From contig NW_026889777.1 in NCBI RefSeq assembly GCF_033153115.1, forward strand, positions 15,190,001-15,254,000: DNA of 64,000 nucleotides, read 5' to 3'. Positions 19,477-22,600 of the stretch are shown in pieces. The stretch is from Saccostrea echinata. Lineage: Eukaryota. The notes beneath the pieces are model-generated. The model was not told where the DNA came from, made no database searches, and saw nothing but the letters and a program-made list of their open reading frames with translations. Both the position numbers and the translations under genes were made by a program. Numbering within the stretch: the stretch's first letter is position 1; each line of letters opens with the position of its first letter.

Positions 19477-19691
19477 AGAAAAAACGAACTTTTTGTTGTT
19501 TTTCTGAAAATTGTATTCAGCAGCCATATCTATAACAGTTACTGTTTTTGCAAGTTCGTACATGTTAAGCTGAAGTGAAATCCGAAGTCTTCATTTTGGG
19601 ACAGATTCCGTCCTACAGGATGCATCTCTATATTACTGTTAACTCAAAGTGTGGTTCTCAATAGCATAGTTCCCAATATAACAGTTAATAG

Positions 19692-22600
19692 TCAGCTAGG
19701 ATGAAGTCTTCGGCTAGCAGATGATGAGCGTTTGATGCTTGGGATTGAGGGACCCTGGTCTGTTAATAAACACAATTTAAGTATATAATGTTCTCGAAGA
19801 AAACCATTGAAATTTTAGCAATCTTAAAAATAAAACTGAAATATAAAGTGTAGAATTGCCATCTCTAAGTAATTTATGCAATATTTTAGTATTTTAACCT
19901 TTGTTCCTTTTTTTTTTTTTGTTTTGTTTTCCCTTAAGTATAGTTAATGAAATACCATGATTGTAGAGTATAATAAAACGATAAAAGTCACTTACCAGAT
20001 ATTGGTTTTATTGCTGCTAAGAAATTAGTTTGCTTAGTCCGAATCTCGATCTTTACAATTTCATTTTTAAGGAATAAAAACTGCATTCCTTTGCTTAAAT
20101 TCGAAAAAGAATGCTTTGTATTGTTTATGATTAGAAAGTCGTCTTCTGTTGAATTTGTGGTATGGTTTTCATAATGAGTATCCAAGAAAGTGAATGATAA
20201 CTGATGCACAGACTCCAAGGTCCATGAACACTGACACGTGACACTGGGGAATTGTGGGTAAAATGGCGTACTGATCAGTTGGGGGGATTTATCTATTGTT
20301 AAATAATCTCCACAATCTGCAATAAGAAAGAAAATCATGAAGTCGATCTATTGCGTCGATTTTATGGAAAAAATATGATGACAAGATCGTAATACAATGT
20401 ATATACATTGCAATTGTAAACACGTGCTGTTGGTAAAGAAAGGTTCCAAGCATACAAATATCTAGAGATAGAATAAAAAAGTTTTCGGCGAGTTGGTGAC
20501 ATAAACTTGATGACTCTTCTTTTGTTTTGCTTCGATTTTTTTTAATACCCGAATTGAATTTTCCTTCACTTCTACGTCTCACTCATTCTAGAGATGGAGG
20601 GGGTCGTTGAACCTATCTTAATGATCTAAGCTAGTAGACGTTTGTACATTTCCTCATCAAATCAAGTATGTTACAATTTCAGAATCACTTAACCTTTTTG
20701 AAATTAAAATGATAGTAATTTGCTAACAATTTCAGAATTATTCTACCTTGCCTGTAATTATTAAGATGATTGTAAGATGCATAGAATTTCAGAATCTATA
20801 ATTAAGATGATGTTTCTTTGCTTAACCAAATTATAAGAAAAGTGTTGCACTACCTGACAAAATCTGCATCTTTTCAGTAAACTCGCTATCTTCAGCTTCA
20901 CCAATTGCAGACATCCATACTTCAAATACAATTCCCGGATAGGACAGAGTGTTGATAAAAGCACTATTCTCATAGAATGGTAAAATGATTTCAGAGACCT
21001 CGGTCTTCTCCTGGCGTCTGTAATTTATCCGATACCCCCTCACATAACTAGGATTTATCAAAGGTTTCTCCCATTTCAGAAAGAAGCCATATCGTGTTGA
21101 CGTTAAGGTTACATTCGTAGGCCGACCTGATGGTGGATCTTTGACAAATAAATAAAACAAATTTACGTGTAATTATTAATAGTTATATTCAAGCAAAAAA
21201 AGTGAAACGTAAGGGGAAAAACGTTATATGCATTGATAAGAAAGTACTGCTGGCATCATTTGTATTCCATATTGGTACATTAAAATATCCCTAAAAAATT
21301 GACATTAAGAAATGGAAGGATTTAAACTGCAATAAGTCAACGCAGGAAAACATTTTAGGATTACATGTAAAAACCTAGAGGTTATTGCTTATCGTTTGTA
21401 CTCACAAACTGCTGTAAACACTGCTGTAAATCCGGTCGCATAATTGCTGTCGTCTGTTACAAAAGCTATGGAGGCTCTGTGATCTCTTATAATCATAGAA
21501 CCAGGCTCGTTTCCACAGAACCTCTGATTTCCCGGAATTTCCACATAATCTTTTTGACATAATGGGGAATTTTCGATGTCAATTTTAACAATATCAAACT
21601 GGAAAATAGATGTCATTTACAATAAGCTAAAGAATTTAAAAAAAAAAAACTTTTACAAAGCTAATTGATTAATACTTTAAGTAAAGAAGAAACCCGTTGT
21701 CTAAATTATTCACCCAAATCACTAATTTTTCCTGAACAAATTAATTATTTAGATTAATAAAGCCGCAAACTAAGTCAAAGGGCTTGATCTTTAAGAATTC
21801 AATCTGAGTTTATTATGAAATGATATTTACACTTAAATAGCACAAAATTTACACATGTTCATCTTGAAAGCTAAGTCATTATAGCCCAAAGGATCGAACT
21901 GTTCTGTATACATGATACATGATACATGTATTCAAAGGGAGAAGTTTTTGAGAAGTAAACCACATCTTAATAAACATCAGAATTTGTTTTCGGAATTTTT
22001 ATTTTTTTAATTATACAATTTATTTTTTTTTCTTTTTCATCAAGTTCAGGAGTAAAATAGAGATAGATTTTTTCGGAGGTGAGTTTGTTAATCATATGCT
22101 TCTATCCCGACAAGCAGAAGTGTTACTTTGGCGTCCATGACAACTCCCTTTTCAGAAACATTGAAATACATGGAGATGTATTGAAACCCTCCAATCTGTA
22201 AAGTCTGGGGCTCAACTTAATTGAATGTAAAGATATCACCTAACGTATATTTCAGAGGGGATAATAAACCCTGTCTTTCCAATGGTTTACTTAATAGGAA
22301 GCGACTCCATTTTGTGTAAAATGTAAACATCCGGTGATGTAAATACACGTTTTTTTTCGAGCTTGCCGGAAAGACTCGAGGAGATGCGAGATTGTATTGT
22401 ACTTTGTGAGGAAGTTTTGAAACTGTAGTTGTTTTAGCTCAGTAACTCAGTAGCGCTCATGTTACCTGTTACATGTAGATGAAATTTTGTTTATCATCTT
22501 CTCTTCATGTGAAAAAAATATTTTTCAGTTGATATGCAAATAGGAACTTTATAAACTATAGGTTGATATTGTTTTAGTTTAAGGTTATAACTGTTGCAGA

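What the first reader, a model, noticed from the sequence alone, without database searches (positions are those of the whole stretch)
19644..19759. GPI-anchor-like signal hidden behind a UGA-CUA stop: candidate readthrough switch between secreted and membrane-anchored CUB/FN3 protein
Seen (- strand, last exon): DQGPSIPSIKRSSSASRRLHPS-TGA(19694-19692)-CTA.. continues in frame as LLTVILGTMLLRTTL-TGA(19646-19644). The small-residue omega-like site (SSSA) and polar spacer lie before the first stop, and the hydrophobic tail lies entirely after it. The other 11 exons are intact and phase-consistent. Established: UGA followed by CUA is the best-known leaky stop context in animals and fungi (the strongest form is UGA-CUAG; here it is UGA-CUAU), and GPI signals are omega + spacer + hydrophobic C-terminus. 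Inference: readthrough would give a GPI-anchored isoform and termination a secreted one. The alternative is a recent TGG/TGC-to-TGA nonsense allele or a base error.
Basis: partly seen in the sequence, partly recalled or inferred. Interest (0 to 1): 0.8.

Follow-up and report, generated by a model that had tools for sequence, protein, structure and literature searches.

The report
Oyster gene: anchor-like tail behind stop
An intact oyster gene for a secreted-type protein ends at an old, conserved stop codon of a leak-prone kind, and the 15 codons behind it spell the missing greasy end of a lipid-anchor signal, so a small share of the protein may be tethered to the cell surface, which is not yet shown.

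Summary
On the minus strand a 12-exon CUB/FN3 gene ends ...RRLHPS-TGA(19694-19692)-CTA-T. It stays in frame for 15 codons (LLTVILGTMLLRTTL) to a second TGA at 19646-19644.

All 9 ortholog sequences that reach this tail, from four named oyster species plus one unnamed spliced ORF, end at the same place in "PS". Their tails are otherwise divergent, at 19, 22 and 30 residues.

With the third Ser of KRSSSA as omega, the stop sits at omega+9 and the hydrophobic run starts at omega+10. That matches the published layout of a GPI signal. In the window, such a tail follows 24 of 7937 stops, and CTA follows 14 of 2699 TGAs. There is no SECIS match and no unusual RNA structure.

Verdict: a leaky stop masking a GPI-like signal is about 0.5; ordinary termination with a chance tail is about 0.4.

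The parts
27569..27704 (-). Exon 1, with the signal-peptide-like hydrophobic core VLLLIVHFSCYM. The start is taken at the first in-frame ATG, 27704; a second ATG lies at 27695. The place of the S. cucullata initiator reads ACG.
   Evidence: Local tblastn of the first 28 residues of P0052, sequence, and frame check. The start codon is inferred, not shown.
27319..27398 (-). Exon 2
26688..26832 (-). Exon 3
26085..26390 (-). Exon 4, CUB 1
   Evidence: Pfam CUB at 20.7 bits, just under the 21.4 cut-off
25543..25827 (-). Exon 5, FN3-like, ending at a GC donor (G|GCAAGT)
   Evidence: Pfam found nothing on this piece. It is called FN3 by position and by the orthologs' precomputed PF00041.
24975..25307 (-). 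Exon 6, CUB 2
   Evidence: Pfam CUB E 1.1e-9
23222..23509 (-). Exon 7, FN3
   Evidence: Pfam fn3 at 19 bits, under the cut-off of 25
22758..22888 (-). Exon 8, first half of CUB 3
21406..21598 (-). Exon 9, second half of CUB 3
   Evidence: Pfam CUB E 2e-7
20854..21138 (-). Exon 10, FN3
   Evidence: Pfam fn3 at 23.4 bits, under the cut-off of 25
19996..20316 (-). Exon 11, last CUB, with a phase-1 donor G|GTAAGT
   Evidence: (73% identity to P0001)
19695..19759 (-). Coding part of terminal exon 12: (D)QGPSIPSIKRSSSASRRLHPS, holding the omega-like SSS-A-S and the polar spacer
19692..19694 (-). First stop, TGA. It stands at omega+9 if omega is the third Ser of KRSSSA.
   Evidence: Ortholog proteins end at the same place.
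19688..19691 (-). CTA-T directly after the stop (UGA CUA U context)
   Evidence: literature passages
19647..19691 (-). In-frame 15-codon extension LLTVILGTMLLRTTL: 11 uncharged, mostly hydrophobic residues, then RTTL
19644..19646 (-). Second in-frame stop, TGA (followed by G)
19297..19302 (-). First AATAAA downstream, a candidate poly(A) signal. A second lies at 19118-19123.
   Evidence: Sequence only. The 3' end of the mRNA was not observed.

Best explanation
The gene encodes an oyster-specific extracellular protein: a signal peptide, a short N-terminal part, then CUB-FN3-CUB-FN3-CUB-FN3-CUB and a short Ser-rich tail. Its stop codon is ancient in oysters and lies inside what reads as one continuous GPI-attachment signal.

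That signal runs linker, omega Ser, omega+2 Ser, then spacer RRLHPS plus the UGA at omega+9. The hydrophobic run LLTVILGTMLL(RTTL) starts at omega+10.

Most ribosomes terminate at UGA and release a soluble, secreted protein ending in ...HPS. The stop is UGA-CUA, the context that terminates worst in animals and fungi. A small share of ribosomes, on the order of 1%, would therefore insert Trp, Cys or Arg (recalled) and translate the 15 further codons. In the ER lumen that product would carry a complete GPI signal. The transamidase could cut it at the Ser cluster and tether it to the cell surface.

Shown:
- the sequence anatomy;
- the intact 12-exon gene;
- the stop at the same homologous place in four other oyster species, with a conserved terminal Pro-Ser;
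- the rarity of the combination in this window.

Inferred:
- that readthrough happens here and at what level;
- that the extension works as a GPI signal;
- that orthologs keep the context and the tail.
For: 1. The sequence is as described.

2. The gene is intact: 12 exons, 2571 nt, no internal stops and consistent phases. Each exon is 71-83% identical to the S. cucullata protein P0052.

3. The stop is not a recent lesion. All 9 ortholog sequences that include the tail exon end in 'PS' at the homologous place. They are P0001; P0051, P0054 and P0055; P0060; P0061, P0062 and P0063; and the spliced unnamed ORF P0070. The rest of the tail has diverged in sequence and in length, at 22, 19 and 30 residues. 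Own tail against S. cucullata is 11 of 21 identical, my count on the alignment. The two codons before the stop are thus kept better than their surroundings, as expected if the stop context is under constraint.

4. The geometry fits the published layout: omega+2 is G/A/S, the spacer runs omega+3 to omega+9 or more, and the hydrophobic stretch starts near omega+10 (NetGPI preprint 10.1101/838680, passages).

5. UGA CUA is the high-readthrough consensus (PMC4359377 and PMC4207609, passages). A UGA CUA T context, CACNA2D4, gave 0.61% in HeLa cells. AQP4 (UGA CUA G) gave 2.29% and a non-consensus control gave 0.27%.

6. Rarity in the window: a GPI-like tail follows 24 of 7937 stops, and CTA follows 14 of 2699 TGAs. 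This is the only segment with both.

7. The stretch is single-copy in the genome, so it is not a repeat insertion.

8. Since the stop is old, an unselected relic of a former tail should have decayed. The tail is therefore either chance or maintained (inference).
Against: - No nucleotide sequence beyond the stop was seen for any ortholog, so conservation of TGA-CTA and of the hydrophobic frame is unknown. That is the decisive evidence.
- The uncharged hydrophobic run has 11 residues and is followed by RTTL. That is short, and it has an Arg near the end, compared with the 15-20 residues I recall as typical of GPI signals.
- The context is CUA-U, not the strongest form CUA-G. The one human example read gave 0.61%, only about twice a poor context.
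- There is no unusual RNA structure downstream of the stop (z 0.19) or around it (z 0.83).
- Translation of AT-rich 3' UTRs often gives hydrophobic tails, which act as degradation signals for readthrough products (PMC10364623 and bioRxiv 10.1101/2022.07.20.500724; search listing and start of abstracts only).
- The pattern was chosen after the fact in a scan of very many windows.
- The place of the S. cucullata ortholog's initiator ATG is ACG here, so ER entry of this species' protein rests on an upstream ATG or a non-AUG start.
- No predictor (NetGPI, PredGPI) could be run.
Confidence: 0.5

Rival explanations
1. This is ordinary termination. The protein is simply secreted and ends in ...HPS. 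The in-frame hydrophobic stretch in the 3' UTR and the CTA after the stop are coincidence in an AT-rich genome. Any rare readthrough product is waste, possibly cleared because of its hydrophobic end. The terminal Pro-Ser is conserved for another reason.
For: - Every annotated ortholog ends at this stop and none is annotated with a membrane anchor.
- 36% of stop-to-stop segments in the window are at least 15 codons long.
- The hydrophobic run is short, at 11 residues, with an Arg after it.
- There is no stimulatory RNA structure.
- The context is CUA-U, with 0.61% in the one human case read.
- Hydrophobic 3'-UTR-encoded tails are described as a common feature recognised by quality control (listing and abstract starts only).
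- The pattern was picked out of a very large scan.
- No paper on GPI anchoring through readthrough was found.
Against: - The joint occurrence is rare in the window's own sequence: 0.30% for the tail geometry and 0.52% for CTA after TGA.
- It coincides with an omega-like Ser cluster at exactly the right distance in a protein of the secretory pathway.
- The conserved 'PS-stop' at the end of an otherwise fast-evolving tail has no explanation in this reading.
Confidence: 0.4
2. The tail is a relic. An ancestor had an ordinary GPI signal and a nonsense mutation cut it. In the recent version this is an allele or base error in this assembly. In the old version it happened in the oyster ancestor, and the remnant is decaying.
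For: The omega, spacer and tail read as one continuous signal across the stop.
Against: Recent version: 9 of 9 ortholog sequences with the tail exon, from four other species, end at the same place. A private allele or base error therefore does not explain the stop.

Old version: a tail without selection since before the split of Saccostrea-like and Crassostrea/Magallana oysters should not still be open and hydrophobic (inference).
Confidence: 0.05
3. The UGA is recoded by another route: selenocysteine insertion, or A-to-I editing of UGA to UGG in the mRNA.
For: Both routes are known ways of passing a UGA (recalled).
Against: No SECIS family matched at E up to 10 in 18000-20400 on either strand. 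There is no stable double-stranded structure around the stop (z 0.83). The A of this UGA has G on its 5' side, which I recall as the least favoured neighbour for ADAR. A selenocysteine inside a cleaved hydrophobic tail would serve no evident purpose.
Confidence: 0.03

Closest known systems
Peroxisomal LDHBx and MDH1x: a targeting signal hidden behind a UGA CUA stop (PMC4359377, PMC4207609, PMC5133446)
   Same: Both use the same short leaky context, UGA CUA. Both have a short in-frame extension that supplies a C-terminal sorting signal absent from the main product. Both give a minor extended isoform next to a major terminated one (passages read; PMC5133446 seen only in the listing).
   Different: There the signal is a PTS1 tripeptide for a cytosolic enzyme, lying entirely after the stop, and it is shown by experiment. 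Here the signal would be a GPI-attachment signal of a secretory protein. It is split by the stop, with omega and spacer before it and the hydrophobic part after it. The context is CUA-U rather than CUA-G, and nothing has been shown by experiment.
Conventional GPI-anchored proteins, and secreted versus GPI isoforms made by alternative splicing or alternative 3' exons
   Same: The layout is the same: linker, small omega residues, spacer omega+3 to omega+9, and a hydrophobic end from about omega+10. The outcome, one gene giving a soluble and a tethered form, is known for other genes through splicing (recalled).
   Different: A stop codon interrupts the signal at omega+9. The switch would be translational, not at the RNA-processing level. 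The hydrophobic run is short at 11 uncharged residues.
Oyster 'cubilin-like' or uncharacterized CUB/FN3 proteins (XP_062615203.1 and XP_062614550.1 S. cucullata; XP_078320460-62 C. virginica; XP_011445776 M. gigas; XP_052683512.1 M. angulata)
   Same: These are orthologs: 71-83% identical per exon to the S. cucullata protein. They share the domain order, and their tails end in PS.
   Different: The names are automatic. The resemblance to cubilin is only the shared CUB domain: the hits of over 3000 aa are 27-35% identical over parts of one domain. No function is on record in what I saw.

Membership tests
Functional translational readthrough, UGA CUA class | UGA stop followed directly by CUA | tested here: met
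   TGA at 19694-19692 and CTA at 19691-19689. The next base is T, not the G of the strongest form.
Functional translational readthrough, UGA CUA class | In-frame extension open to a second stop | tested here: met
   15 sense codons, then TGA at 19646-19644.
Functional translational readthrough, UGA CUA class | Stop codon kept at the same place in orthologs | tested here: met
   At the protein level only: 9 of 9 ortholog sequences with the tail exon end at the homologous PS. Which stop codon they use is unknown.
Functional translational readthrough, UGA CUA class | Extension conserved as coding sequence in orthologs (open frame, protein-like substitutions) | not testable with these tools
Functional translational readthrough, UGA CUA class | Extended product or ribosome footprints observed | not testable with these tools
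   Needs ribosome profiling, mass spectrometry or a reporter assay.
GPI-anchored protein | N-terminal signal peptide for ER entry | tested here: inconclusive
   Orthologs start with Met plus a hydrophobic core. Here exon 1 keeps the core VLLLIVHFSCYM. The S. cucullata ortholog's ATG place reads ACG, and the nearest in-frame ATGs lie 22 and 19 codons upstream of it. No signal-peptide predictor was available.
GPI-anchored protein | Small residues at omega and omega+2 | tested here: met
   In KRSSSAS, omega is the third Ser, omega+1 is Ala and omega+2 is Ser. This was checked by inspection, not by a predictor.
GPI-anchored protein | Spacer from omega+3 to omega+9 or more, with a hydrophobic stretch from about omega+10 to the C-terminus | tested here: inconclusive
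   The spacer is RRLHPS plus the stop position, which is omega+3 to omega+9. The hydrophobic run begins exactly at omega+10. It has only 11 uncharged residues before RTTL.
GPI-anchored protein | Predictor call (NetGPI, PredGPI) and release by PI-PLC | not testable with these tools
CUB/FN3 extracellular repeat protein | CUB (PF00431) and fn3 (PF00041) domains | tested here: met
   CUB passes the cut-off in 2 of the 5 exon pieces that encode CUB in the model: 39 and 31.7 bits against 21.4. fn3 stays just under it, at 23.4 and 19 bits against 25. The orthologs carry both families in the precomputed column.
Selenoprotein | SECIS element in the 3' UTR | tested here: not met
   No SECIS family was among the 9 weak Rfam matches at E up to 10 in 18000-20400.

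The most novel reading that the evidence does not exclude
All ostreid oysters keep a leaky UGA inside the GPI-attachment signal of this CUB/FN3 protein. One mRNA would then make a major secreted form and a minor, possibly regulated, lipid-anchored surface form. This would be the first case of GPI anchoring gated by stop-codon readthrough, and a hint that hidden membrane-anchor signals behind leaky stops exist more widely in molluscs.
Probability: 0.35. Interest if true: 0.8.

Novelty: new variant of a known kind. Interest (0 to 1): 0.6.

Why it matters
Functional readthrough is known to unmask peroxisomal signals and a few other extensions. Five searches of the held library found no paper on a GPI anchor added this way.

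If real, it would add a new way of setting the ratio of secreted to surface-bound protein, at the ribosome rather than by splicing. It would also extend the UGA CUA rule to molluscs.

The test is cheap. The named ortholog mRNAs are public, and reading the 60 bases after their stops would largely decide it.

Tried and rejected
**Routes that gave nothing**
The base call at the stop, the splice junction into exon 12 and the 3' end of the mRNA in this species stay unchecked.
- Run listing: four runs of about 50 million letters hold 36-46% of the sampled words of 19400-21700. By my count about half of that stretch is exon or 3' UTR. This hints at expression, but the tool marks the run kind as a guess, so I give it no weight.
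- Paralogs in the own genome: none for the terminal exon DNA and none for the last CUB exon protein at E up to 0.01 (6 candidates scored, only self matched). No within-genome comparison of the tail was possible.
- Wider protein searches: one search listed 50 hits at E up to 0.001, of which only P0001 (73%) and P0002 (38%) are close. One search gave 2 of 3769 candidates, one search gave 1 of 478, and one search gave 3 of 630. No relative outside the oysters was found with these queries, and none with a longer C-terminus. The length windows limit what could be seen.
- Selenocysteine: rejected.
- Structure-stimulated readthrough or editing: no support.
- Alternative acceptor at the AG inside ..CCTAG|C: in the phase left by exon 11 this would read A-D-Y-stop, by my own reading, so it cannot reach the tail.
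- Earlier notes of the scan: nothing bearing on this finding.
- Supplementary files of papers were not opened. Readthrough gene lists in the supplements of PMC4359377 or PMC4207609 might name GPI proteins, and I could not see them.
Searches used exon 11 alone and database proteins.
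Full report
**Observation**

Searches show, on the minus strand, an acceptor AG at 19761-19760 and a terminal exon from 19759. With the G at 19996 that ends the previous exon, it reads D-QGPSIPSIKRSSSASRRLHPS. Then come TGA (19694-19692), CTA (19691-19689) and T (19688). The frame stays open for 15 codons, LLTVILGTMLLRTTL, to a second TGA at 19646-19644.

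**The gene**

Stop-to-stop frames and Pfam show alternating CUB and FN3-like pieces between about 26400 and 19990.
- CUB scores E 1.1e-9 for 24970-25419 and 2e-7 for 21392-21616.
- fn3 scores 23.4 and 19 bits, under the cut-off of 25.

I aligned the full-length Saccostrea cucullata protein P0052 to the window. I located exon 1 with its first 28 residues. I then fixed the splice sites by frame arithmetic.

The result is 12 exons:
- Exon 1: 27704-27569
- Exon 2: 27398-27319
- Exon 3: 26832-26688
- Exon 4: 26390-26085
- Exon 5: 25827-25543
- Exon 6: 25307-24975
- Exon 7: 23509-23222
- Exon 8: 22888-22758
- Exon 9: 21598-21406
- Exon 10: 21138-20854
- Exon 11: 20316-19996
- Exon 12: 19759-19692

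Together they total 2571 nt, which divides by 3, with no internal stop. Ten introns are GT-AG and one is GC-AG. Each exon is 71-83% identical to P0052.

**The stop is old**

A full HMMER scan with exon 11 alone gave 50 hits at E up to 0.001. Only two are close:
- P0001: 73% identity, 452 aa, with the match ending 22 residues before its end.
- P0002: a fragment at 38% identity.

Further searches with database proteins and cluster look-ups named the relatives:
- S. cucullata: XP_062615203.1 and XP_062614550.1
- C. virginica: cubilin-like isoforms X1-X3
- M. gigas: XP_011445776, versions 1-3, plus UniRef entries
- M. angulata: XP_052683512.1

Their sequences fall into three groups.
- Nine include a tail after the last CUB: P0001, P0051, P0054, P0055, P0060, P0061, P0062, P0063 and P0070. 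P0070 is an unnamed ORF that is spliced across the last two junctions, so it comes from processed RNA.
- Five stop just after the last CUB by reading into the intron: P0052, P0053, P0002, P0066 and P0067.
- Nine are internal fragments.

All nine tails end in Pro-Ser:
- ...KRSSSSVQRLDPS
- ...DANSAQMPLKGPS
- ...GTNPDAGAPS, with variants

The tails are 22, 19 and 30 residues long and are otherwise hardly alignable between genera. Own tail against S. cucullata is 11 of 21 identical, my count.

Hence the stop at this place predates the split of these oyster lineages. The two codons before the stop are also kept better than the rest of the tail.

**How the pieces fit a GPI signal**

The NetGPI preprint (10.1101/838680, passages) gives this layout:
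- a polar linker;
- omega;
- omega+2, mostly G, A or S;
- a spacer from omega+3 to omega+9 or more;
- a hydrophobic stretch from about omega+10.

Take the third Ser of KRSSSAS as omega. Then omega+1 is Ala, omega+2 is Ser, and the spacer is R-R-L-H-P-S plus the stop position, which is omega+9. Leu, the first residue after the stop, is omega+10.

The orthologs also have small-residue triplets 9-11 residues before their stops: SSS, NSA and SGT, by my reading. Such residues are common in these tails, so this adds little.

One weakness is that the uncharged hydrophobic run is only 11 residues and is followed by RTTL.

**Leakiness**

Passages in PMC4359377 derive UGA CUA as the consensus for high basal readthrough in human cells. 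They report 2.29% for AQP4 (UGA CUA G) and 0.99% for SYTL2. CACNA2D4 (UGA CUA T, the same four bases after the stop as here) gave 0.61%, and a non-consensus control gave 0.27%.

PMC4207609 shows that UGA CU(A) works in a fungus and in animal cells. PMC12233894 adds that positions further up and down modulate the level several-fold.

So a leak on the order of 1% is a reasonable expectation here, not a measurement. Folding gives no sign of a stimulatory structure: z is 0.19 for 120 nt from the stop and 0.83 for 191 nt around it.

**Chance**

Among 7937 stop-to-stop segments of the window in all six frames:
- 36% are at least 15 codons long;
- 1.1% (89) contain, within 20 residues, an 11-residue window as hydrophobic as the observed one;
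- 0.30% (24) meet the stricter geometry of an 11-30 residue tail with an uncharged hydrophobic window starting in the first three residues.

CTA follows 14 of 2699 TGAs (0.52%). Only this locus has both features.

The stretch is single-copy in the 923-Mb assembly, so it is not a repeat.

The product of these rates is very small per gene. But the features were chosen after seeing them, in a scan of very many windows. AT-rich 3' UTRs also tend to encode hydrophobic peptides, which quality control recognises (listing and abstract starts only).

**Other routes past the UGA**

No SECIS match appeared at E up to 10 in 18000-20400. Editing of UGA to UGG has no structural support, and the neighbouring base is one I recall as unfavourable. 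An alternative acceptor inside the exon would hit a stop after three codons, by my reading.

**What could not be done**

No read evidence exists here for the base at the stop, the last junction or the mRNA end.

I left those places out of every later search. I did not look for the gene in contig or read collections by another route.

Ortholog DNA beyond the stop, the decisive evidence, was therefore not seen. No GPI or signal-peptide predictor was available.

**Weighing**

With the stop shown to be old, a decaying relic is unlikely. The choice is between a maintained split signal and coincidence.

For the split signal:
- the exact omega+9/omega+10 register;
- the leaky context;
- the secretory nature of the protein;
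- the conserved Pro-Ser-stop.

Against it:
- the short tail;
- the weaker CUA-U form;
- the lack of any ortholog nucleotide data;
- after-the-fact selection.

I put the leaky-stop and GPI reading at about 0.5, ordinary termination with a chance tail at about 0.4, and the rest on relic or other recoding.

**Comparison with what is known**

It works like the peroxisomal isoforms LDHBx and MDH1x. Both have a sorting signal exposed by UGA CUA readthrough. Here, however, the signal would be a GPI-attachment signal that the stop cuts in two, in a secretory protein.

Five searches of the held library found no paper describing GPI anchoring by stop-codon readthrough. That library lacks most subscription journals.

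If confirmed, this is a new variant of a known kind.

Noticed in passing
window 27636-27638 (minus strand), exon 1: Where the S. cucullata ortholog has its initiator Met (MVLLLIF...), this genome reads ACG (..INTVLLLIVHF..). In-frame ATGs lie upstream at 27704 and 27695. They would give a signal peptide with a long charged N-region, or the start may be non-AUG.
   Followed up: partly
window 25541-25542 (minus strand): Intron 5 of the gene uses a GC donor (TCAG|GCAAGT). All ten other introns are GT-AG.
   Followed up: partly
window 29386-30423 (minus strand): An uninterrupted 346-aa open frame with a Pfam Galactosyl_T domain (E 2.1e-45) lies just upstream of the CUB/FN3 gene. It is probably an intronless beta-1,3-galactosyltransferase-like gene.
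   Followed up: partly
window 41443-45197 (minus strand): Long open frames look like a retrotransposon pol: a reverse-transcriptase YVDD motif and integrase-like parts. This was seen only in the translations.
   Followed up: no
window 19408-19476: A long (GA)n microsatellite lies about 170 nt downstream of the second stop, probably inside the 3' UTR.
   Followed up: no
window 18394-18493: A hairpin-like stretch gives weak, sub-threshold Rfam matches on both strands (mir-4904 at 28.9 bits against a cut-off of 100; scaDm46E3 at 24.1 against 61). It is probably an inverted repeat, not a known RNA.
   Followed up: no
orthologs P0053 (M. gigas XP_011445776.3) and P0052 (S. cucullata XP_062614550.1): These models end just after the last CUB by reading into the last intron (..ING, ..PGK). 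Earlier M. gigas versions and a spliced unnamed ORF include the tail exon. A second 3' end without the tail may therefore exist.
   Followed up: partly
window 23800-23927 and 34672-34858: Two runs of N. The first lies in intron 6 of the gene. Both were left untouched.
   Followed up: no
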